From NCBI RefSeq assembly GCF_963921235.1, contig NC_086112.1:45756001-45820000 (forward strand): DNA of 64,000 bases, read 5' to 3'. The notes under the pieces are model-generated. The model was given only the letters and a program-made list of their open reading frames with translations. It had not been told where the DNA came from and made no database searches. A program made the translations under genes and the position numbers. Below, piece by piece: positions 28,161-64,000 of this stretch. Source of the DNA: Mobula hypostoma (lineage: Eukaryota). Numbering within the stretch: position 1 is the first letter of the stretch; the number at the start of each line of letters is the position of its first letter.

Positions 28161-28227
28161 GTGTTTCCACTGATCAAAGGAATTATTCGTCAACCCGAAA
28201 TATTGAAGTAAACAATGTCATTGTTAC

Positions 28228-28363
28228 GCAAACAACAGGAATTCTGCAGATGCTGGAAATTCAAGCAACATACATCAAAGTTGCTGGTGAACGCAGCAGG
28301 CCAAGCAGCATCTATAGGAAGAGGCGCAGTCGACGTTTCAGGCCGAGACCCTTCGTCAGGACT
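28228..28363 (-). mobile_element. Penelope pLTR terminal fragment with hammerhead motif
   Basis: Near-identical to 59921-60057; minus strand reads AGTC-CTGACGA-AGG..CCT-GAAA-CGTC-GACT. Confidence 0.92.
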
Positions 28364-28376
28364 CCATGGTGGATAC

Positions 28377-29233
28377 TATACACGCACCTCTCTGGCATCC
28401 TTATGGTCAGTAACCACCTTTCGCAACTGGAGGCCCTGCTACTCAAAACTGTCTTATAGCTGGTCTCTTACACTAACACACATGCACCACACTTTTATAT
28501 GGCCCAGTTCAGCTTTCCACCATGTTCTTTGATACTTTGTGATCCCATGGTCATTGACCTGAACAGATCTAAGCATGGGGAGCCACTCTTAAAAATACTC
28601 ACTCCTTTAGACTGCTGAAGTCACTGGCCACACAGAGGGTCATGAATATATCCCAGACGAGTCTCCAGTGAACAAAGTCACTGGAGAGATATTGAATCTG
28701 GTGATATAGAAGTTTTTATTCAGCACAACAAGCAAGTATTCTTATGGTGACTCTCTCGGTAGAGTCCCACAAACCCAAAAATACATCACATTTTTATACC
28801 CTTAACGTCAAAGGTAACAATGATTGTATTTTTGGGTTTGTGGGACTCTACCGAGAGAGTCTCCATAAGAATACTTGCTTGTTGTGCTGAATAAAAACTT
28901 CTATATCACCAGATTCAATATCTCTCCAGTGACTTTGTTCACTGGAGACTCGTCTGGGATATATTCATGACCCTCTGTGTGGCCAGTGACTTCAGCAGTC
29001 TAAAGGAGTGAGTATTTTTAAGAGTGGCTCCCTATGCTTAGATCTGTTCAGGTCAATGACCATGGGATCACAAAGTATCAAAGAACATGGTGGAAAGCTG
29101 AACTGGGCCATATAAAAGTGTGGTGCATGTGTGTTAGTGTAAGAGACCAGCTATAAGACAGTTTTGAGTAGCAGGGCCTCCAGTTGCGAAAGGTGGTTAC
29201 TGACCATAAGGATGCCAGAGAGGTGCGTGTATA
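28377..29233. repeat. Long near-perfect inverted repeat: arms 28377-28785 and 28825-29233 (409 bp each), 39-bp spacer
   Basis: The arms are reverse complements; I saw only about 2 mismatches by eye. Confidence 0.97.
28943..28960 (+). promoter_or_regulatory. Primer-binding site, tRNA-Pro-like
   Basis: TGGAGACTCGTCTGGGAT vs canonical Pro PBS TGGGGGCTCGTCCGGGAT (15/18), directly after the LTR end. Confidence 0.75.
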
Positions 29234-29650: not shown

Positions 29651-30133
29651 ATCCTGATGACCCCAAGCCAGCCCTTGACACTGATTACTACCATTCAGAA
29701 ACCCTTCACCCCCAGGGAGAAGCAAAGCATTTTGTCTGAGCTGCCCTCACTCTATTTCGCTTGTGGGAACTCAGAGTTCTGGCGTAAACTCAAAGAGATG
29801 ACTGGAATTCACCGGGTGCACCTCAAAGATATACACGTGTTGGTTAAGGTGAAATGCCCGAGGAATATGTGGGATAGTATGGCACAGGGAGTGCCGGATG
29901 GACATAGGCAATACTGGGAATGCCAGCAACAAGGAGAGATATTACTTTGGTAAAGGGGAAGTTGGGATGGCACCTGCAGAAGTTAGATAACATCAGGTTG
30001 AGAATCATAAGACCATAAGATCATAAGGAGCAGAATTAGGTCATTTGGCCCATTGAGTCTGCTCTGCCATTTCATCAGGACTGATCCATTGCCCTCTCAT
30101 CCTCAATCTCCCACCTTCTCCCCCTATCCCTTT

Positions 30134-31504
30134 AACTGATTTAATCAATGACATTTATGAGACTGGAATAATACTAGAAGAGATGAAAAAATCAGTATTT
30201 ATCACTCTTCCTAAGAAACCTGCAGCAATAGAATGTGAATTACATGGGACCATAAGTTTAATGAGTCATATCACCAAGATACTTCTAAGAATTTTGATGA
30301 CAAGAGCTAAAAGTAAGATACAAGCTGAAATAAGTAAAGAACAATGTGGTTTTGTGAAAGACAAAGGTACAAGAAACGCAATATTGATAGTAAGGATACT
30401 ATCAGAACAAGCTATTCAAGTGCAAAAAGATTTGTTTGTTTTATCGACTACACAAAAGCATTTGATAAAGTGAAGCACAATAAGTTAGTTGAAATATTAC
30501 AAAAAACTCTAGATCTAGATTCAAAAGACCTCTGCCCAATCAGAAATCTGTACTGAGAACAAGCTGCTGCTGTAAGAATAGAGAAGTGAGTCAGTTTACG
30601 AAAATCAAGGGAGGCGTTAGACAAGGGTGCATTTTCTCCCCTGATTTATTTAATGTGTACAGTGAAACAATATTACAAAAAATAAGAGACATCTTGGGAA
30701 TCAAAGTTGTCAGTGAAAACATCAATAATTTCAGATACGCAGATGACACTGTGTTAATTGCAAATATGGAGGAAGAACTACAAAACTTAATTGATATAGT
30801 TGTTGAAGAAAGTGCAAAAATGGGTTTATCTATCAATTGCAAAAAGACAGAATGTATGGTGATATCCAAAAAGAAGGAGAATCCTATCTGCAGGCTGAAA
30901 ATAAATGGGTAAGACATAAAACAAGTACAGAAATTTTGCTACTTAGGGAGCTGGGTGACATCAGATGGCAGGTGCGACATGGACATCAAAAGAAGAATAG
31001 GGATGGCAAAAGACACCTTTACGAGAACGAAGAGTATACTGACCAATAGTAAACTAGGCATGACAACCCGCCTCAGTGTACTGAAATGTTACATTTATCC
31101 AGTTATGTTATATGGCTCAGAATGTTGGACAATGTCAAGTAACATGAGGAAACGAATTGTAGCAGCATAGATGTGGTTTTTGAGGAGGATGCAAAGAATA
31201 TCATGGATGAAACTAATATCTAATGAGGATGTCATGAACAGAGCAAACACAAAAAGAGAAATAATGTATGAGATCATGAAAAGACAACGTAACTTTATTG
31301 GACATGTGATTAGGAAAGAGGAATTAGAATGCACGGTAATTATGGGAAAGATTGAAGGGAAGAAAGTAAGAGGAAGACGAAGACAAATGATGATGGAGAC
31401 AACAGCCAGAGAACTGGAAATGTATACCAATGAATTGACCCGAAACAGGAGTGTGTTGGCCATGGCAGTCAAAGCTCAAACTGGGCATGGCACCTGATGA
31501 TGAT
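30134..31504 (+). mobile_element. 5'-truncated RTE-clade LINE
   Basis: FIDYTKAFDKV, GVRQGCIFSPDLFN, YADD, YGSECWT, MWFLRRMQRISW; (TGA)n tail. Confidence 0.95.
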
Positions 31505-35038: not shown

Positions 35039-36511
35039 CTGAAGTTTATTGTAAGTTTTAAAATGGGCATACATTCATTACATGTATTATTTTAGGGTTC
35101 AGTTGCCCTACTATCTGCTGAAATAACCACTCTTTTTCCATGCTGACATTGAGGCATGCATCTGCCCACTTGATCTTTCTAAGGATTCTACTTATTTGGG
35201 GATGACTATTAGCAAATGGTACAAATTATTATTCAAATATTTGCAAATATTTAGTTAATATATTTCAACATCTTCTAAATTGCTGAATTCATAAACCTGT
35301 TTCAAAAATAAGCTTAATCTCAAACAGAATTGAAGAAGTATGTAAAATTAGAGCAAAATTTTTGTTTGACATATCGATAACCTCTGATTTATTTCTAATA
35401 TAAGCAGAAAGAAATCATTATATAATCATGCATTTATGAAAAAGAGTTGCACACTGTCTCAGAGATTTATATTTTGTTGATAATATTGTCCAAATAAAAC
35501 TTCGTGCTGGATAACTTGCCTGATTACAAAGTGTACTTTTGATGGAAAGAAATTAAAAACGAGCTCTGTTGGCTAAATATTTTGTGTATGTGTTTCAACA
35601 GCAGTATATTCAGGCAGAGGTCCATTCTGCTAGAAAGTGTCTTTGTGGGATGTGCCTACTAGACTTGAAAAGATTAGTTTGTGCTGGTCTATTAATGGGT
35701 ACAATGGCATTAGGGATGAGATGTATCCTGAGCAAGATAAATACTGTCAGCTTTGGCTTTATCTCAGCAGTGAGATTTATCCAAAGCTGAATGGTTATTG
35801 ATCAGGCTGTAGATTATCATATAATGAACTCTAAGTTCACTTAGGACTTATTTTTGGTGAAGCAAAGTTGACAAACAAACAGCTACTCAATTAATTCTTA
35901 AGTTCTCTCTTACAATTAATGGTCACTGGAAAACCAAGGTGAGTTGCTGCAAAGCTTCTTACAGATTCAATGCTTTTGCAGCTTCTGGAAGACTGGAGTA
36001 TAGCTCACCAACTTCTTACAAAACAATATTAAAAGGATGAGGAATATTGCCATAGCAGTATGTATTTCTGAATAGAATCACTATGGTCGGGTCTGTTTGG
36101 TGTAGAAGTGTTCAACTACTTCATTAAAATGATCTTGTTATGTCTTGCAGATTCAAAACATTTAACTAAAACTAAGGAAGACGTGGGGTGTCCAAAAATG
36201 GGTGTAACTTCGTCTTTGCTTTAAGCAAGATGCACAGGTATCACACGGTAGCGTAATGACGTATGCAGTTAACTTTTTTTTTTACAATATAACCCAGAAT
36301 TAGTTATTTAATCAAAAAAGAATACTTAATCAACTTATATATATACAAGATTACTCAAATATTATTGAAATATTAAACACTCAACACTCCTCCCTGCTTA
36401 GCTACAGTATAAACTCCAACTCAAGAATGAATGCATCTCAACTATATACACAGTAGACGATATGATACAACTACTATATCCAGACATCCACAGCATAGTA
36501 AGTTTTAAATT

Positions 36512-37137
36512 CCAACACTCCTGTATGCATCAGAAACCTGGACAACATACCGATGACATCTGAAGGCACTTGAAAAGTTCCATCAATGCTGTCTTCGAAA
36601 CATCTTAAATATCAGCTGGGAAGATTGAAGAACCAACGTCAGTGTGCTAAATGAAGCAAAAACAACAAGCATTGAAGCCTACGTCATCAAGAACCAACTA
36701 AGATGGAGTGATCATGTTGTTCGGATGAAAGACGAACGTCTGCCGAAACAAATCTTCTACTCCCAGTTTGAAGAAGGCAAACGTAAAAGAGGTAGACAAC
36801 AGAACAGATTCAAAGACGTCTTAAAAGCCAACATGAAGAAATGTAACATCGACATCAACAATTGGGAAACCAATGCCAAGGACAGGAAACTCTGGCAAGC
36901 CATCATCCGAGAAGGAACAGCAACTTTCGAAGCCAACAGATGTGCAGAATTAGAAGAAAATGGAAAGAGAGGCAGCACCAACCAAAGCCCGATCTGCCAT
37001 CTGGAACTACCTGTCCTGAATGTGGAAGAACTTTCAAAGCCAAGATTGGACTCATAAGCCACTTGAGAGCCCATAAGTAGATCAACAGAACGAAGACCAT
37101 CATCCTTGACCTCGAGTGATAGCCACAACCATGACGA
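36512..37137 (+). mobile_element. 5'-truncated RTE-clade LINE with ~31-bp TSD
   Basis: LLYASETW, QLRWSDHVVRMKDERLPKQIFYS, C-terminal CPECGRTFKAKIGLISHLRAH; TSD CAGACATCCACAGCATAGTAA(G/A)TTTTAAATT at 36481-36511 / 37138-37168. Confidence 0.93.
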
Positions 37138-52344: not shown

Positions 52345-54005
52345 CTGATTAGGGACAGTACGTTTGAGGATGAGTAGGTTGTGTTTCACAAGCCATGCTG
52401 AATTATTCATGGAGGCGATGAAACAAATTGATGAAGTTAGAGAAGTCAATGTGATCTATATGGATTTTAGTAAGGCGTTAGACAAGGTTCCCCATGGTAA
52501 GCTCATTCATGAAGCCAGGAGACATGGGGTCCTGGGAAACTAAGCTGCATGGATTTGGAATTAGCTTGCCCATAGAAGCAGGGGCTGGTCGTAAATGGAG
52601 TGTATTCTGCCTGGAGGCCAGTGTTCTGCAGGGATCCACTCTGAGACCCCTGCTCTTTGTGATTTTTATAAATAATTTAGAAGAGGAAGAAAAGAGTGGG
52701 TTAAAAACGTAAACATGAGGAATTCTGCAGATGCTGGAAATTCAAGCAAAACACATCAAAGTTGCTGGTGAACGCAGCAGGCCAGGCAGGATCTCTAGGA
52801 AGAGGTACAGTCGACGTTTCAGGCTGAGACCCTTCGTCAGGACTAACTGAAGGAAGAGTTAGTAAAAGATTTGAAAGTGGGAGGAGGAGGGGGAGATCCA
52901 AAATGATAGGAGAAGACAGGAGGGGGAGGGATGGAGCCAAGAGCTGGACAGGTGATGGCAAAGGGGATATGAGAAGATCATGGGACCCCTTCCATCCCTC
53001 CCCCTCCTGTCTCCTCCTATCATTTTGGATCTCCCCCTCCTCCTCCCACTTTCAAATCTCTTACTAGCTCTTCCTTCAGTTAGTCCTGACGAAGGGTCTC
53101 GGCCGGAAACGTCGACTATACCTCTTCCTAGAGATGCTGCCTGGCCTGCTGCGTTCACCAGCAACCTTGATGTATGTTGTTCAAAGAGTGGGTTAGTAAG
53201 TTTCCAAATGACAGGAAAGTTGTTGGTGTTGTGGATAGCTGTCGTAGGTTATAATCAGACACTAATCGGATGTGGAGCAGAGAAGAGGCAGATGGAGTTC
53301 AATTCAGAAAATTGTGAAGTGATACACTTTTGAAAGATGAATTTTAAAGCAGAGTGCAGTGTTAATGGCTGGATTCTTAGCAGTGCGGAGGAACAGAGGG
53401 ATCTTGGGGTCCACGTCCGTAGATCCTCAAAGTTGCTGCGTGTTAAGAAGGTGCATGGTGTGTTTGTCTTTGTTTAGTCATGGGATTGATTTCAAGAGCT
53501 ATGAGGTAATGTAGCAACTCTATAAAACTCTGGATATACCACACTCTGATTATTGTGGTCACTTCATTATAGGAAGGATGTGGAAGTTTTAGAAAGGCTG
53601 CAGAGGAGATTTACCAGGATGCTGCCTCATGAGGAGAGGTTGAGTGAGCTAAAGGTTTACTCTTTGGAGCAAAGGAGAGTGAGAGGTGATTCAAAGGAGG
53701 GTAAGAGGCATAGGTAGAATGGATAGCCAACATCTATTTCCCAGGGCAGCAATGGGGAATACGAGAGGGCATAATTTTAAGGTGATTGGAGGAAAGTATA
53801 GGGGGTTGTCAGAGGTAGGACTTTACACAGAGAGGTGTAGGTGCATGGAACATGCTGCCAGGAGTGCTGGTAGAGGCAGATACATTAAGGACATATAAGA
53901 AACTCTTATATTGGCACATGGATAAAAAAAAAATGGAGGGCAATGTGGGAGAAACGAGTTAGATTGACCTGGAAGCAGGATAATAGTTCAGCAAAACATT
54001 GTGAG
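52345..54005 (+). mobile_element. Decayed CR1 LINE interrupted by a Penelope fold-back
   Basis: YMDFSKALDKVPH, QGSTLRPLLFVIFINNL, MEFNSENCEVIHF, TRGHNFKVIGG. Confidence 0.85.
52704..53182. mobile_element. Fold-back Penelope pLTR pair
   Basis: 13-bp TSD AAAGAGTGGGTTA; ~190-bp inverted arms, each with a CTGACGA..GAAAC hammerhead core. Confidence 0.92.
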
Positions 54006-58484: not shown

Positions 58485-60181
58485 ATCGAGAGTAATTGGA
58501 AGAAATTTGAGTGCACTTCACGTTGAGTTTTAATTTTGCAAAAAATCAGTACAGAGCTAAATAAATTCCTGTTTATTTTTTAATCTTTCTTTTCCGACAA
58601 CATCAAAGACAGAGAAAGTTCCTGCTTGGTGTGATCAGAAGCTAAATCTAAGCAGAAGGTTTAGACCAGTTTTTCCTCTGTATTTTCTGAATACTACTTG
58701 GAGGAAGAGGAAACTTAGCCTAATTGTCTGTAAGGTGGATCTCTAGCCCCATTCCTTCTATTCCCTGATATTTCAAATTTTGTGAATGCATCCTTTTAAT
58801 GTTATGTAACTCCAATCCTTTAATATCTGGAAAATTCATTCATGTACCCAATCAAAGAGCTTAATTAATTTTCAAAAATCCACAAAAATATTACCAAACT
58901 ATACCTCCTTTCTATTTCTCCAATTCCTCTCCACCACTCTAGTAACTTCAACCCCAGCTTCATATTTTGCCAGCATTAAGGATTGGACCTTTGCCCACAG
59001 TAGTTTGGGGACAAACTAATTTATCTGGAGATCCATATAAAATAAATGAAAGGAAGCCTGAGGACTTTAATGCTCCCTTCATAGTGTTTCAGCATTGTTC
59101 TGGTGGTGCAGTGGTTTTCATGATTCCAAAATTAAATACTGATACCATTTTCATTAACTGGAAAACGTGGTCCCTAAGTTAATGCAGTGATGACTGCATT
59201 GTTAACAAGTTAAAACTAGAGGAAGTCAACTGGCTAAAAGTTCTTTAAACATTCCAAAATGTTTGATTTGTTGAAACAAATGGCCAACAAAACATGTCAT
59301 GATTACTTACAGAGAGATACACATTGAAACAGTTTCTTCATCTCACAGTCTTACCAAATGCCTATTTATACTAATCCTACCCTAACCCATGTTATTCTCC
59401 CTACATTACTATCATCTAAAAAGAATGCAATGAGAATACACCAATTTCTTATTCACAGCTTAGAATTCTATAGTATTCACTCAAAATGGAAAGTTTCAGT
59501 GTCAATAACAGATACAAATCTGTAGACACCCATCTTCTAGGTGCGTAAGGCAAACAGAGTGAGAGGAAGGAAGGAAAAGCTGCAAATCACAAAAGTAATT
59601 AAAGAATTAAAAAAGAGGAACCAGCATTAATATATGGGAAAATTTTAACTGCATTGAATGACAACTGGCATTCATGATGGGGATGCAATGAGAAGTCTAA
59701 TCTATTTTAATAGCTCGGCTTCATCATCAAGTTATTCATTTAATTAAGACCTCCTTGACACTTTTGAACAAATATTTAATCACAACAACTTGCATATATA
59801 AAATAAATGCCCCAATATGCTTTACAGGATTACACTCATAGGAACAACTAACATTGATTCACATAAATGAGATGAAAGAATAGGTGACCAAAAGCCTAAC
59901 CAAACAAGACTTTTCAAGGACGCAAACAACAGGAATTCTGCAGATGCTGGAAATTCAAGCAACACACATAAAAGTTGCTGGTGAACGCAGCAGGCCAGGC
60001 AGCTTCTCTAGGAAGAGGTGCAGTCGATGTTTCAGGCCGAGACCCTTCGTCAGGACTAACTGAAGGAAGAGTGAGTAAGGGGTTTGAAAGTTGGAGGGGG
60101 AGGAAGTGGGAGGAGCCAAAGGAGAAATTATTAAGAGTAAGGACTAATTCCGCTAGACGGAGCAGAGTGGTGGTAGAGGGG

Positions 60182-61471
60182 AATTCCAGACCTAATCAGT
60201 TCCCCTCTACCACCACTCTGCTCCGTCTAGCGGAATTAGTCCTTACTCTTAATAATTTCTCCTTTGGCTCCTCCCACTTCCTCCAAACTAAAGGTGTAGC
60301 TATGGGCACCCGTATGGGTCCTAGCTATGCCTGCCTTTTTGTTGGCTTTGTGGAACAATCTATGTTCCGTGCCTATTCTGGTATCTGTCCCCCACTTTTC
60401 CTTCGCTACATCGACGACTGCATTGGCGCTGCTTCCTGCACGCAAGCAGAGCTCGTTGACTTTATTAACTTTGCCTCCAACTTTCACCCTGCCCTCAAGT
60501 TTACCTGGTCCATTTCCGACACCTCCCTCCCCTTTCTAGATCTTTCTGTCTCTGTCTCTGGAGACAGCTTATCCACTGATGTCTACTATAAGCCTATGGA
60601 CTCTCATAGCTATCTGGACTATTCCTCTTCTCACCCTGTCTCTTGCAAAAACGCCATCCCCTTCTTGCAATTCTTCCATCTCTGCCGCATCTGCTCTCAG
60701 GATGAGGCTTTTCATTCTAGGACGAGGGAGATGTCTTCCTTTTTTAAAGAAAGGGGCTTCCCTTCCTCCACTATCAACACTACTCTTAAACGCATCTCCC
60801 CCATTTCACGTACATCTGCTCTCACTCCATCCTCCCGCCACCCCGCTAGGAATAGGGTTCCCCTGGTCCTCACCTACCACCCCACCAGCCTCCGGGTCCA
60901 AAATATTATTCTCCGTAACTTCCGCCACCTCCAACGGGATCCCACCACTAAGCACATCTTTCCCTCCGCCCCCCCCGCATTCCACAGGGATCACTCCCTA
61001 CGCAACTCCCTTGTCCATTTGTCCCCCCCATCCCTCCCCACTGATCTCCCTCCTGTCACTTATCCGTGTAAGCGGAACAAGTGCTACACATGCCCTTACA
61101 CTTCCTCCCTTACCACCATTCAGGGCCCCAAACAGTCCTTCCAGGTGAGGCAACACTTCACCTGTGAGTCGGCTGGGGTGATATACTGCGTCCGGTGCTC
61201 CCGATGTGGCCTTTTATATATTGGCGAGACCCGACGCAGATTGGGAGACCGCTTTGCTGAACACCTACGCTCTGTCCGCCAGAGAAAGCAGGATCTCCCA
61301 GTGGCCACACATTTTAATTCCACCTCCCATTCCCATTCTGACATGTCTATCCACGGCCTCCTCTACTGTAAAGATGAAGCCACACTCAGGTTGGAGGAAC
61401 AACACCTTATATTCCGTCTGGGTAGCCTCCAACCTGATGGCATGAACATCGACTTCTCTAATTTCCGCTAA
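60182..61471 (+). CDS. Uninterrupted 3' part of the Penelope RT + GIY-YIG endonuclease ORF (5'-truncated)
   Basis: About 430 stop-free codons with RT core and GIY-YIG motifs; the N-terminal ~70 aa of the predicted 498-aa ORF are antisense junk. Confidence 0.8.
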   Translation, partial: NSRPNQFPSTTTLLRLAELVLTLNNFSFGSSHFLQTKGVAMGTRMGPSYACLFVGFVEQSMFRAYSGICPPLFLRYIDDCIGAASCTQAELVDFINFASNFHPALKFTWSISDTSLPFLDLSVSVSGDSLSTDVYYKPMDSHSYLDYSSSHPVSCKNAIPFLQFFHLCRICSQDEAFHSRTREMSSFFKERGFPSSTINTTLKRISPISRTSALTPSSRHPARNRVPLVLTYHPTSLRVQNIILRNFRHLQRDPTTKHIFPSAPPAFHRDHSLRNSLVHLSPPSLPTDLPPVTYPCKRNKCYTCPYTSSLTTIQGPKQSFQVRQHFTCESAGVIYCVRCSRCGLLYIGETRRRLGDRFAEHLRSVRQRKQDLPVATHFNSTSHSHSDMSIHGLLYCKDEATLRLEEQHLIFRLGSLQPDGMNIDFSNFR

Positions 61472-61764
61472 TGCCCCACCTCCCCCTCGTACCCCATCTT
61501 TTACTTATTTTTATACACACATTCTTTCTCTCACTCTCCTTTTTCTCCCTCTGTCCCTCTGACTATACCCCTTGCCCATCCTCTGGGTCCTCCCCCACTT
61601 GTCTTTCTTCCCGGACCTCCTGTCCCATGATCCTCTCATATCCCCTTTTGCCTATCACCTGTCCAGCTCTTGGCTCCATCCCTCCCCCTCCTGTCTTCTT
61701 CTATCATTTTGCATCTCCCCCTCCCCCTCCAGCTTTCAAATCCCTTACTCACTCTTCCTTCGTT

Positions 61765-61800
61765 AGTCCTGACGAAGGGTCTCGGCCTGAAACGTCGACT
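61765..61800 (+). ncRNA. Minimal type I hammerhead ribozyme in the Penelope pLTR
   Basis: AGTC-CTGACGA-AGG(GTCTCGG)CCT-GAAA-CGTC^GACT: stem I AGTC/GACT, stem II AGG/CCT, palindromic ACGT stem III. Confidence 0.85.
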
Positions 61801-62045
61801 GTACCTCTTCCTAGAGATGCTGCCTGGCCTGCTGCATTAACCAGCAACTTTTACGTGTGTTGCAAGAGTTTTCAAGGAGCACCTTAAAGAAAGCAAGCGA
61901 TGCAGAGAGATTTAGTCTGGGAACTTCAGAATTTGCTGCTTAGGAGCTGAAAGCAAAGCCATCAGGAAGAGGGATGTAGGAGATCAGGATTGAACAATGG
62001 AGCTTAATTGTAGGAACTTGACAATTCTCAGAGAGATGGAGAAAA

Positions 62046-62616
62046 TTATGTTATATTGTTCATCCATCGCTGACGTCGATGAGGACCTCGACACCATTAT
62101 GATGGTGTCGAGACTAGCGCTTGATTTGGATTTAAGTGAGGGAGAGTTGCGCAGCGTCAGCCTCACTCTCTCTTCCTGATTCCCATCTGGATCCAGTGGC
62201 AAGACAGAGTCTAGACGGCTGGAGATGGGACTAGGTGCAGTGGATGACCAGGACGTCTTCTGTGTCTTGTCCTGCTCTACATGTTCCACGACGCTTGCAG
62301 AGACCGCCTTCTTGACCGTTGGACCTTCCGTAGGTCTCGTCCGCTCAATCCGCCGGAGTCTGTCTTCACATGCTGGGATAGACAACTCCCTATCACACCG
62401 AGGGTTTGAGACCCGTCGGCTACCCTCACCTGGTTTAGCCGGCTTGTTGAAGCCGTTGCCCGGGGTGTGGCCGCTGTCGCATGCAAACAGCTACGGGGAG
62501 CCACAGGTGAGAGCTGAGTGCCAGGTGGTGACCAAAGGTGGACTAACCGCCCTGAAAAGGACGTGACATGTTCCCCCACCAGAGGTGCTACCCCTCCCTG
62601 ACACCCCAGACACCCC
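62046..62616 (-). mobile_element. Short non-coding retro-element: HDV-like ribozyme head + RTE-like hairpin tail
   Basis: GC- and CpG-rich island in an AT-rich context; 5' end is a ribozyme P1; 3' hairpins CTCGACACCATCATAATGGTGTCGAG and CATCG..CGATG, then an A-rich microsatellite-like end. Confidence 0.72.
62425..62607 (-). ncRNA. HDV-like self-cleaving ribozyme (predicted)
   Basis: P1 GGGGTGT/ACACCCC; P2 CTCACCTG/CAGGTGAG; P3 GGC/GCC; L3 begins TCCCCG; P1.1 CC/GG; GGGCAAC; P4 CGGCTT/AAGCCG; J4/2 GCTAA with the catalytic C at 62438. Confidence 0.85.
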
Positions 62617-64000
62617 AAGGTGGGAATTTAGTGAGACCAGAGCTTAAATACAAGGAGGAAAACTTGAAGCATTTGGCAAAGCTTCAGGTAAGTCATAAGG
62701 GGAGAGGTCTAGTTAGGAGAATTTCACAGGTAGGAGAGAAGATGCCTGATTGACAACCAAACAAGTTTTCATTGTGGGATCTGAAAGAACGCCTTTATCT
62801 TACAGAACATATGAAGTTGTCTTAGATTTAGCTCATAGGGTCTCCAGTATAAATTGTCAAGTTTTATTGAGCAGGGCCTTGCTTCATTTAGCAAGCAGTT
62901 AAAACAGCATTAGTTAAGTGATAGGCCCCTGGTTTATATAGATTTAAGAAGCTCTGCCTGAATCCGACAGGTGTTCAGTTGATCAAGAATACAAGATTAA
63001 AACAGCCATGTGGTAGGAATTGGCAGATTCAAACATACAGTATTTTTTTTTGGATTTTAATTCTTATTCTGTTGTTTTTGCCAAGCTAGAGGAATAAAAC
63101 GCCCTCTTTTTGTTTTGCAAACATGGATGCAATTATTCACCAGGCAGATCAAGAAGGTGGAATTGAAAGTAAAAGTTGATATAATTTACAGTGAGATTTA
63201 TCCAAAAGTAAAATATTTTAACCCTGGTGGTTGAAGAAACAATGCTGTATTGCATGGCTACAGATGTAGCAGAGAACTTAAGTCATGATAGCTTCCCACC
63301 GAGAAGAGATATCTCCCTCTCCAAGCCGGAACAGAATAGAATTGCATCACTCCCCAGATGTTATTGGAGCCTTGTGCAAATTGCTAGCTATAAAATGTGT
63401 CTTTTGAGTTGCTGCCATTTTTAATATTGTATCATTTATTTTAATTGGGGTTCTGGTGAACACATGTAGACATTTGTCTCTAGTCGTCATTTCATTGATC
63501 AACTGGTTACGAGCAGCCTCAACCCTATTATCCCTCACTCTCAGACCAAGGCACTGACATCAAATTGCCTGCTCATCTTCTGAATGAAGGTTTGGTATGC
63601 AGCATGGGTGAGCCAAAAGCGAGATGAGAAAAAAGGTGGCATTGTGAAGAATGAATCTATAAAAGTGAATTTAATGTTTTAATCTAGAACAATAGGAAGA
63701 AAATAGGAAGAAAACTTTCAATATCATAAATGCACATAATTTGATGGTCAAGGATTTCACTTTTTTTTGGAATATTGCAGTGCCAATGAAAGATGCTCAT
63801 AGTGGTAATTTTAATTGTCAGGGGAAAAGATTTCTGTCTTTCTCACCAGCTCCTATGGTGACTGGAATATTTAGATTAAGCATTTCTATTTTGTGCACAT
63901 TTACTTAGTCTCACAATGATACTTCATCCTCAGTGGACATATGCAAGTTGTCAGTGCAAGAAATCGTTTCATTAGATTAAATAACAATGGGCATTCAGTT

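What the first reader, a model, noticed from the sequence alone, without database searches (positions are those of the whole stretch)
62046..62616. Non-autonomous retro-element headed by a complete HDV-like self-cleaving ribozyme (a 'ribozyme SINE')
Seen on the minus strand: P1 GGGGTGT (62607-62601); 89-nt structured J1/2; P2 CTCACCTG (62511-62504); P3 GGC; L3; GCC; P1' ACACCCC (62468-62462); GGGCAAC; P4 CGGCTT-caac-AAGCCG; J4/2 GCTAAAC; P2' CAGGTGAG (62432-62425). This is the full nested double-pseudoknot order, and the GC-rich element begins essentially at P1 (GGGGTGTC is tandemly duplicated there, 62616 and 62607). About 380 nt with no recognisable protein domain follow, ending in a hairpin tail resembling RTE 3' ends. 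There is no tRNA head or Pol III box. Established: HDV-like ribozymes process the 5' ends of R2, RTE and ingi/L1Tc retrotransposons, and R2-derived SIDEs exist in Drosophila. Inference: this is a promoter-less SINE-like family that cuts itself out of host read-through transcripts and is mobilised by an RTE-type RT in trans. Retained CpGs suggest it is young. I cannot tell whether it has already been described.
Basis: partly seen in the sequence, partly recalled or inferred. Interest (0 to 1): 0.88.

Follow-up and report, generated by a model that had tools for sequence, protein, structure and literature searches.

The report
Ribozyme-headed non-coding RTE retroposon copy
This 571-base insert is one copy of a very abundant non-coding jumping element made of the head and tail of an RTE-type LINE. 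Its head folds as an HDV-like self-cutting RNA, a known arrangement, here with an unusual extra hairpin inside the ribozyme core.

Summary
On the minus strand, 62616-62425 contains every part of an HDV-like double pseudoknot in the right order, and 62046-62616 is a sharply bounded repeat present at very high copy in at least six coded organisms.

Two corrections:
- The conserved P1, and the usual 5' end of copies, is the upstream GGGGTGT (62616-62610), not 62607-62601.
- L3 is 28 nt long and carries a conserved hairpin.

The first ~515 nt are 77% identical to the 5' UTR of ~4.1-kb autonomous LINEs found in other assemblies. These LINEs have a single endonuclease + reverse-transcriptase ORF and a 39-nt 3' UTR. 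The last ~60 nt resemble those LINEs' 3' ends. The element is therefore a "bipartite nonautonomous RTE".

Across 12 lineages, whose ORFs are only 38-67% identical, the ribozyme core stays 83% identical. P1, P2, P4 and the L3 hairpin show compensatory changes, the L3 UCC is invariant, and the catalytic C is kept in 11 of 12.

Self-cleavage is untested. The kind is already published: RTE 5' ribozymes (Ruminski 2011) and bipartite RTEs linked to them (Kojima 2018). Only the L3 hairpin seems unreported.

First readers of this scan noted the same family repeatedly elsewhere in this genome.

The parts
62046..62616 (-). Whole element: one copy of a bipartite nonautonomous RTE-type retroposon (3' end uncertain within 62046-62050)
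   Evidence: Depth of Logan contigs is 10^5-10^6 inside and about 20-50 outside. Contigs diverge into unrelated flanks at 62617.
62610..62616 (-). P1 5' strand GGGGUGU. The predicted cleavage site is immediately 5' of G62616.
   Evidence: Conserved in 9 of 11 loci that reach the 5' end. Upstream flanks are unrelated. Compensatory changes with P1' in L031 and L036.
62601..62607 (-).
   Evidence: Degenerate in L002, L003, L008, L011 and L031. Pairs with GGCACUC 62522-62516 in RNAalifold. LINE copy L005 starts at a single repeat.
62512..62609 (-). J1/2: a 98-nt insert folding as a long irregular hairpin
   Evidence: RNAalifold on 6 lineages predicts 29 pairs, 9 of them with changes on both sides. 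Mean pairwise identity is only 62%.
62504..62511 (-). P2 5' strand CUCACCUG
   Evidence: Pairs with 62432-62425. U-A to A-U compensatory change at 62505/62431 in L004 and L012.
62500..62502 (-). P3 5' strand GGC
   Evidence: Invariant. Pairs with GCC 62471-62469, with one G-C to G.U change in L007.
62472..62499 (-). L3, 28 nt: UCC (62499-62497), two hypervariable bases, G62494, then a hairpin GCUGU/ACAGC (62491-62487 with 62477-62473)
   Evidence: UCC invariant in 12 of 12 and the G kept in 11 of 12. Positions 62496/62495 vary C/A/U within the family and between lineages. The hairpin is kept in all, with G-C to A-U in L003.
62469..62471 (-). P3 3' strand GCC
62462..62468 (-). P1 3' strand ACACCCC
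   Evidence: ACACCCU (a G.U closing wobble) occurs in L012 and in a sister subfamily of the host genome.
62456..62461 (-). GG (62461-62460), the P1.1 partners of C62497 and C62498, then GCAA. Together with C62455 this reads GGGCAAC.
   Evidence: P1.1 pairs are standard in 23 of 24 cells. GGCAAC matches the Rfam HDV-like consensus.
62440..62455 (-). P4 hairpin CGGCUU-CAAC-AAGCCG
   Evidence: G-C to C-G flip at 62454/62441 in L078, L089 and a sister subfamily in the host genome.
62433..62439 (-). J4/2 GCUAAAC, with the presumed catalytic C at 62438
   Evidence: The C is kept in 11 of 12 loci; L008, otherwise decayed, has U. GGCUAA matches the Rfam consensus.
62425..62432 (-). P2 3' strand CAGGUGAG
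62103..62424 (-). Body derived from the LINE 5' UTR, with no coding capacity
   Evidence: 77% identical to L004:4734-5054 and its equivalents. No Pfam hit. No tblastn match to the LINE ORF.
62046..62112 (-). Tail region, overlapping the end of the 5'-UTR-derived body at 62103-62112: an 11-bp hairpin (62112-62102 with 62097-62087), whose 5' arm belongs to the head homology, then a 5-bp hairpin (62081-62077 with 62069-62065), then GGAUGAACAAUAUAAC
   Evidence: Fold z-score -3.35. Alignment to the 3' ends of L004, L031, L078 and L003.

Best explanation
The insert is one copy of a 'bipartite nonautonomous RTE'. This is a non-coding retroposon that keeps only the first ~515 nt (the 5' UTR) and the last ~60 nt of an RTE-type LINE, and is copied by that LINE's endonuclease/reverse transcriptase in trans.

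Its first 192 nt fold as an HDV-like double-pseudoknot ribozyme:
- P1 62616-62610 with 62468-62462
- a 98-nt hairpin in J1/2
- P2, P3 and P1.1
- a hairpin inserted in L3
- P4
- the catalytic C at 62438

**Inferred mechanism.** A master copy is transcribed as part of a longer host or upstream transcript. The ribozyme cuts immediately 5' of G62616, which defines the element's 5' end. The 3' hairpins recruit the LINE protein for target-primed reverse transcription, so full-length daughters begin exactly at P1.

**Shown here:** the anatomy, the homology to autonomous LINEs, high copy number with sharp ends, and conservation and covariation of the fold.

**Inferred:** catalysis, read-through transcription and trans-mobilisation.
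For: **Family and boundaries.** Depth is about 3-9x10^5 inside 62036-62621 against about 20 outside, in several organisms. Contigs run into unrelated flanks at 62617.

**Head and tail match autonomous LINEs.**
- 62618-62103 is 77% identical to the 5' UTR of LINEs L001, L002, L004 and L005.
- Those LINE copies are 99.4-99.7% identical to each other. Each is 4.09 kb with a 1069-aa ORF carrying Exo_endo_phos + RVT_1.
- The tail resembles the LINEs' 3' ends.

**The fold is conserved well beyond its surroundings.**
- The same ribozyme head sits at the exact 5' end of LINEs whose ORFs are only 38-67% identical to each other.
- The core from P2 to P2' is 83% identical, against 62% for J1/2.

**Compensatory changes:**
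- P1: G-C to U-A in L031; U-A to G-C in L036
- P2: U-A to A-U in L004 and L012
- P4: G-C to C-G in L078, L089 and a sister subfamily in the host genome
- L3 hairpin: G-C to A-U in L003

**Core residues.** UCC and the P1.1 GG are invariant, and the catalytic C is kept in 11 of 12. GGGCAAC...GGCUAA matches an Rfam HDV-like consensus.

**Literature.** RTE 5' HDV-like ribozymes, and bipartite RTEs that retain the LINE 5' end, are both published (PMC6765202, PMC5786205, PMC3774820).
Against: - No cleavage assay and no 5'-OH RNA ends were available.
- Rfam scores are far below gathering.
- L3 is 28 nt with a hairpin, which is unlike characterised HDV-like ribozymes.
- The P1 closing pair is G-C here, not the canonical G.U.
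- Covariation is modest: 3 nested pairs plus 2 in P1 among 12 sequences, and 20 of 500 shuffles reach the count of compensatory pairs.
- The autonomous partner of this exact family was not recovered from the window's own genome.
- The LINEs come from unlabelled assemblies, and their membership of the RTE clade rests on architecture, not a tree.
- No clear target-site duplication.
Confidence: 0.85

Rival explanations
1. The conserved 5' structure is not a self-cleaving ribozyme. It would instead be another 5' UTR element with an HDV-like shape, such as a binding site for the LINE protein, an IRES-like platform or an exonuclease-resistant cap substitute. The 5' end would then be set by an internal Pol II promoter.
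For: - No biochemical test has been done.
- L3 is four times the usual length.
- The P1 closing pair is G-C rather than G.U.
- Rfam models do not reach threshold.
- L1Tc combines an internal promoter with its ribozyme in the same 77 nt (PMC3383444).
- HDV-like folds also promote translation and protect 5' ends (PMC6765202, PMC13708176).
Against: - The residues that matter for catalysis, not just the helices, are the most conserved: UCC-NN-G in L3, GG of P1.1, GGGCAAC, and GGC-N-AA with the C.
- The element starts exactly at P1 position 1 in lineages with unrelated flanks.
- The non-coding derivative needs no IRES, yet it keeps the whole fold.
Confidence: 0.1
2. The insert is an accidental internally deleted or 5'/3'-recombined fragment of a single LINE copy, not a member of a self-propagating non-autonomous family.
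For: It is a single copy in the 64-kb window. The head/tail junction near 62103 was mapped only by comparison with 77%-identical LINEs.
Against: - Depth stays within a few-fold across 62078-62610, including the head-tail junction, at about 10^4 times the flank depth.
- Contigs from several organisms cover both halves.
- First-reader notes record the same short element at other places in this genome (unverified).
Confidence: 0.03
3. The pairing is a chance arrangement in a GC-rich repeat, with no structured RNA at all.
For: The MFE fold of 62620-62420 is not better than that of shuffles (z -1.28). That calculation cannot see pseudoknots.
Against: - 96.7% of pair cells are kept across 12 diverged lineages, against 29-54% for slid partners.
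- The covariation score is reached by 0 of 500 shuffles.
- There are compensatory changes in four helices.
Confidence: 0.02

Closest known systems
Bipartite nonautonomous RTE elements (RTESINE1/2, WALLSI3, MAR4_MD, RTE-N2_Lch; Kojima 2018, PMC5786205)
   Same: Non-coding. Made only of the 5' UTR part (including the true 5' end) and the ~40-70-nt 3' end of an RTE LINE. High copy number. The paper already suggests that the 5' self-cleaving ribozyme explains why the LINE 5' end is retained.
   Different: I could not compare sequences directly, because no consensus library or supplement was available. From memory only, the body and tail resemble marsupial RTESINE2/WALLSI-type repeats. That paper does not show a ribozyme structure for these elements.
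HDV-like ribozymes at the 5' ends of RTE, R2, R4, Baggins and L1Tc LINEs (Ruminski 2011; Eickbush 2010 and 2013; Sanchez-Luque 2011)
   Same: A double pseudoknot at the exact 5' terminus of a promoter-poor LINE. Cleavage defines the 5' end. A long J1/2 is known: 216-498 nt in silkmoth R2 (PMC3774820).
   Different: L3 here carries a conserved 5-bp hairpin, giving 28 nt instead of ~7-8. No paper I could search reports this. The P1 strand is tandemly duplicated. Ruminski 2011 itself could not be read.
R2 SIDEs and trypanosome NARTc (PMC3414825, PMC3185411)
   Same: Non-autonomous internal-deletion derivatives that keep the parent LINE's 5' ribozyme and 3' recognition end.
   Different: SIDEs are rDNA-specific with a restriction-like endonuclease partner. 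NARTc belongs to the ingi clade and carries the Pr77 promoter. Here the partner is an APE+RT single-ORF LINE dispersed through the genome.
Genomic HDV ribozyme and CPEB3 ribozyme
   Same: Identical core motifs, by established knowledge of the HDV ribozyme: L3 U20-C21-C22-N-N-G25, G38-C44 GGGCAAC, and J4/2 G-C75-N-A-A. The helix order is the same.
   Different: Large insertions in J1/2 and L3. G-C instead of G1.U37 in this copy. The context is a retroposon, not a viral or intronic single-copy sequence.

Membership tests
HDV-like self-cleaving ribozyme | Nested double-pseudoknot strand order P1-P2-P3-L3-P3'-P1'-P1.1-P4-J4/2-P2' | tested here: met
   All strands are present and complementary in the window copy: P1 7/7, P2 8/8, P3 3/3, P1.1 2/2, P4 6/6.
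HDV-like self-cleaving ribozyme | Catalytic C in J4/2 followed by N-A-A, and two L3 cytosines pairing with GG after P1' (P1.1) | tested here: met
   C62438 in GGCUAAAC is kept in 11 of 12 lineages. UCC 62499-62497 and GG 62461-62460 are invariant or nearly so. It matches the Rfam consensus GGCAAC...GGCUAA.
HDV-like self-cleaving ribozyme | G at +1 forming a G.U wobble that closes P1 | tested here: inconclusive
   G at +1 is present. Its partner is C in this copy and most lineages, and U in L012 and in a sister subfamily of the host genome.
HDV-like self-cleaving ribozyme | Compact L3 of about 7-8 nt, as in characterised members | tested here: not met
   L3 is 28 nt with a conserved internal hairpin.
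HDV-like self-cleaving ribozyme | Match to an Rfam HDV-type covariance model at gathering score | tested here: not met
   The best match is RF02682 at 14.1 bits against a gathering score of 44, and it is partial. Nothing appears in the 4-kb scan. This is expected, given the two large insertions.
HDV-like self-cleaving ribozyme | Helices supported by covariation among homologues | tested here: met
   Compensatory changes in P1 (2 pairs), P2, P4 and the L3 hairpin. 96.7% of cells are paired against 29-54% when slid, and the covariation score is reached by 0 of 500 shuffles. The sample is small at 12 sequences.
HDV-like self-cleaving ribozyme | Site-specific, divalent-ion-dependent self-cleavage that is lost on mutating the catalytic C | not testable with these tools
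   Needs an in vitro transcription and cleavage assay.
Bipartite nonautonomous RTE (Kojima 2018) | 5' part homologous to the 5' end and 5' UTR of an autonomous LINE, starting at its first base | tested here: met
   62618-62103 aligns to L004:4540-5054 at 77% over 524 columns, and likewise to L001, L002, L005, L031 and others.
Bipartite nonautonomous RTE (Kojima 2018) | 3' part homologous to the LINE 3' end; no ORF | tested here: met
   The tail alignment shares the motif UCAUCG..CGA.GGA(C/U)GAACA and a hairpin. There is no Pfam domain and no tblastn hit to the LINE ORF in 62046-62616. The similarity is short, so this is weaker than the head match.
Bipartite nonautonomous RTE (Kojima 2018) | The partner LINE belongs to the RTE clade | tested here: inconclusive
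   The architecture fits: about 4.1 kb, a single 1069-aa APE+RT ORF, a 39-nt 3' UTR and no poly(A). The nearest Atlas clusters are chordate APE+RT LINEs. No RT phylogeny with reference clades was possible.
Bipartite nonautonomous RTE (Kojima 2018) | An autonomous partner with the same head and tail in the same genome | not tested
   Only unverified first-reader notes mention full-length RTE LINEs with an HDV-like head in this genome. The RTE-like ORF fragment at 36509-37077 has a different tail.
Classical SINE (Pol III head) | Head derived from tRNA, 7SL or 5S with an internal Pol III promoter | tested here: not met
   ARAGORN finds no tRNA. Rfam finds no small-RNA family in 62400-62640.

The most novel reading that the evidence does not exclude
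The ribozyme may be an undescribed structural subclass of HDV-like ribozymes. It carries a conserved hairpin grafted into the 3' half of L3 and a duplicated P1 strand. It is ancestral to a deep clade of chordate RTE-type LINEs and invisible to Rfam and to fixed-L3 motif descriptors. If so, the genome holds on the order of 10^4 copies of it, and intact copies lying in sense orientation in introns could cut host pre-mRNAs.
Probability: 0.45. Interest if true: 0.55.

Novelty: new member of a known kind. Interest (0 to 1): 0.4.

Why it matters
**What it documents.** It gives sequence-level evidence for an idea that Kojima (2018) only proposed: bipartite nonautonomous RTEs keep the LINE's 5' end because that end is a self-cleaving ribozyme.

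**What it shows about the ribozyme.** The ribozyme is the best-conserved part of a LINE clade whose proteins have diverged to about 40% identity.

**A possible blind spot.** If the L3-hairpin form is active, it widens what the HDV fold is known to tolerate. It would also mean that standard searches (Rfam, fixed-loop descriptors) miss a very large population of vertebrate ribozymes.

**A practical product.** The covariance model built here (R1) could be used to count these ribozymes genome-wide.

Tried and rejected
- **Rfam.** E-value scans of 60000-64000 and 62400-62640 gave no HDV family near threshold, only a partial 14-bit match.
- **MFE folding** of 62620-62420 gave z -1.28. This is uninformative because pseudoknots are not modelled.
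- **Other copies in the window.** Repeat search, blastn and the covariance model found none.
- **Metagenome scan** with a 17-mer from P2/P3. 115 of 120 returned loci were chance matches. Only L031, L036, L078, L089 and L126 were real.
- **Target-site duplication.** The best candidate matches 9 of 13 positions across the two flanks, which is not convincing.
Rejected as the main P1, because that repeat is degenerate in several lineages and does not follow the P1' changes in L031 and L036. It may still serve as an alternative P1, since LINE copy L005 begins with a single repeat and some family contigs stop matching near 62606-62608.
- **The RTE-like ORF fragment at 36509-37077 as the partner LINE.** Rejected, because its tail differs.
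- **Papers.** Ruminski 2011, Webb 2009 and Webb & Luptak 2011 are not held. The supplements of Kojima 2018 are not held, so I could make no direct comparison with named Repbase families.
- **Look-alikes in the scan's notes by sequence:** blank.

Full report
**Observation**

The GC-rich block is a sharply bounded repeat. Logan contigs of four runs give summed word depths of about 3-9x10^5 from about 62040 to 62621. The flanks give about 20-50. The tool warns that these depths are not copy numbers; the ratio only suggests an order of 10^4.

At least six coded organisms hold 44-82% of the element's 31-mers. Organism B carries the same insertion, in flanks that are about 3% diverged (pieces 25 and 32).

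The element occurs once in the window. It has no tRNA-like head and no Pfam domain in any ORF.

**What it is derived from**

A spurious 113-aa ORF across the head found 11 database proteins. Their contigs show that the head is the 5' end of autonomous LINEs.

- In sample ERZ26859072, four copies are 99.4-99.7% identical over 4.09 kb (L004:4537-8627).
- Each has about 840 nt of 5' UTR.
- Each has one 1069-aa ORF with Exo_endo_phos and RVT_1 domains.
- Each has a 39-nt 3' UTR with no poly(A).

Window positions 62618-62103 align to the first ~515 nt of this LINE at 77% identity. After 62103 the window element no longer follows the LINE's 5' UTR. It ends in two hairpins plus GGAUGAACAAUAUAAC. This ending aligns with the 3' ends of L004, L031, L078 and L003 through a shared UCAUCG..CGA.GGA(C/U)GAACA motif.

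The element is therefore head plus tail with no coding region.

A metagenome scan added five more lineages. By tblastn, the ORFs downstream of these heads are only 38-67% identical to the L004 ORF. The head therefore belongs to a deep LINE clade. The nearest Atlas clusters are chordate APE+RT LINEs.

**The ribozyme**

I aligned 12 lineages and scored the double pseudoknot in two ways.

My own script, for all helices including the pseudoknots:
- 92% of pair cells are standard pairs, even with two 5'-decayed copies included.
- The figure is 26-53% when the 3' partners are slid.

The official counter, for the nested helices only:
- 96.7% of cells are paired, against 29-54% when slid.
- The covariation score is reached by 0 of 500 shuffles.
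- Three pairs have compensatory changes, a count reached by 20 of 500 shuffles.

RNAalifold on the core independently predicts P2, P3, the L3 hairpin and P4.

Compensatory changes:

| Helix | Pair (window coordinates) | Change | Where seen |
|---|---|---|---|
| P1 | 62615/62463 | G-C to U-A | L031 |
| P1 | 62612/62466 | U-A to G-C | L036, L126 |
| P2 | 62505/62431 | U-A to A-U | L004 lineage, L012 |
| P4 | 62454/62441 | G-C to C-G | L078, L089 |
| L3 hairpin | 62491/62473 | G-C to A-U | L003 |

The P4 flip also occurs in a sister subfamily within the host genome. There the segment after P1' reads GG-UACA-CCGCUU-CGAC-AGGCGG-GCUAAAC (loose ends, reverse-complemented).

The unpaired core is the most conserved part:
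- L3 begins UCC in 12 of 12 lineages. Two hypervariable bases follow, then a G in 11 of 12.
- GG follows P1' and pairs with the two L3 cytosines (P1.1).
- GGGCAAC and GGC-N-AA are kept.
- The presumed catalytic C62438 is lost only in L008, which is otherwise decayed (a broken P4 and a 3-nt insertion).

By established knowledge of the genomic HDV ribozyme, these correspond to U20-C21-C22...G25, G38-C44 and G74-C75-N-A77-A78. Rfam's F. prausnitzii HDV-like model aligns the same GGCAAC-P4-GGCUAA segment, but at only 14 bits.

Mean pairwise identity is 83% for P2 to P2', 62% for J1/2 and 71% just downstream.

1. *P1.* In every lineage that reaches the 5' end, the unrelated flank stops at the first GGGGUGU (62616-62610). 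That repeat tracks the changes in P1'. The second repeat (62607-62601) is degenerate in L002, L003, L008, L011 and L031. In the family, 63 contigs of run X6 diverge into unrelated sequence at 62617.
   - P1 is therefore 62616-62610, the predicted cleavage site is 5' of G62616, and J1/2 is 98 nt.
   - J1/2 folds as a long irregular hairpin whose base is formed by the second repeat paired with 62522-62516.
   - The second repeat may still act as an alternative P1. LINE copy L005 starts with a single repeat, and some family contigs stop matching at 62606-62608.
2. *L3.* It is 28 nt. The extra part is a conserved hairpin placed between the catalytic half of L3 and the 3' strand of P3.

**Mechanism: what is shown and what is inferred**

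Shown:
- the fold, its conservation and its terminal position
- the head-plus-tail anatomy
- the very high copy number

Inferred, from established work on R2, RTE and L1Tc (PMC6765202, PMC3774820, PMC3185411):
- Master copies are transcribed within longer transcripts.
- The ribozyme releases an RNA that starts at G62616.
- The stable fold may protect the 5'-OH end.
- The 3' hairpins are recognised by the LINE protein for target-primed reverse transcription.

The window copy has every helix and core residue intact. However, it is just one of many copies, and nothing shows that it is itself a source copy.

**Age**

CpG o/e is 0.67, against 0.19-0.33 in the flanks. The copy differs from the family majority at 11 or more of 571 sites. 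It also predates the split of organisms A and B. It is moderately young, not recent.

**Comparison with what is known**

- HDV-like ribozymes at the 5' ends of RTE, Baggins, R2, R4 and L1Tc elements are established (PMC6765202, PMC3774820).
- Non-autonomous derivatives that keep them are known for R2 (SIDEs, PMC3414825) and L1Tc (NARTc, PMC3185411).
- Kojima 2018 (PMC5786205) names 'bipartite nonautonomous LINEs', lists RTE-derived families (RTESINE1/2, WALLSI3, MAR4_MD, RTE-N2_Lch), and suggests that the 5' ribozyme explains why they keep the LINE's 5' end.
- Long J1/2 inserts of 216-498 nt occur in silkmoth R2 (PMC3774820).

The kind is therefore known. I found no report of a hairpin inside L3. 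The primary RTE ribozyme paper could not be read, so this remains open.

First readers of this scan noted the same ribozyme-headed RTE element at several other places in this genome. I did not check those notes.

**Verdict**

The element is a new member of a known kind, with a possibly new ribozyme variant. Catalysis is untested.

Noticed in passing
window 60099-60284: A perfect 85-nt inverted repeat with a 16-nt spacer. It draws sub-threshold hits to many unrelated miRNA families (best MIR1858, 107.7 bits against a gathering score of 137). It lies next to copies of a repeat also found at 28226-28409, 52707-52890 and 59920-60103. It is probably a repeat-derived long hairpin, not a miRNA gene.
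   Followed up: no
window 61762-61867: An extremely abundant short repeat just 3' of the element. Summed contig depth reaches 3x10^7, about 50 times that of the RTE element. Other copies in the window lie at 28254-28363, 52735-52847 and 59948-60060.
   Followed up: no
window 36509-37077 (+): A fragment of a different RTE-like LINE ORF. It covers the C-terminal ~190 aa, at 45-68% identity to the L004 ORF, and ends in a C2H2-like CxxC...HxxxH motif. Its 3' tail is unlike that of the element studied. It lies inside the stretch another note calls a Gypsy element with captured RBM25.
   Followed up: partly
window 30132-31425 (+): A distant RT-like match (25-30% aa identity to the L004 ORF), presumably a LINE of another clade.
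   Followed up: no
window 28377-29233: A 409-nt perfect palindrome with a 39-nt spacer (repeat search I1). Another first-reader note already flags it.
   Followed up: no
L005:4551 compared with L004:4542: Among 99.4-99.7% identical LINE copies, one begins with a single GGGGTGTC instead of two. This suggests either alternative cleavage at the second repeat or slippage at the 5' end.
   Followed up: partly
L031, L036, L089, L126 (P2 3' strand): Four lineages carry one extra, variable base (U, A or C) at the same place inside the 3' strand of P2. This gives CAGGU-N-GAG, a conserved bulge position.
   Followed up: no
All LINE ORF C-termini (L004:8495-8560, L031:4055-4120, window 37010-37075): The ORFs of these RTE-like LINEs end in a single C2H2-type zinc-finger-like motif just before the stop codon. 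The very short 3' UTR follows.
   Followed up: no
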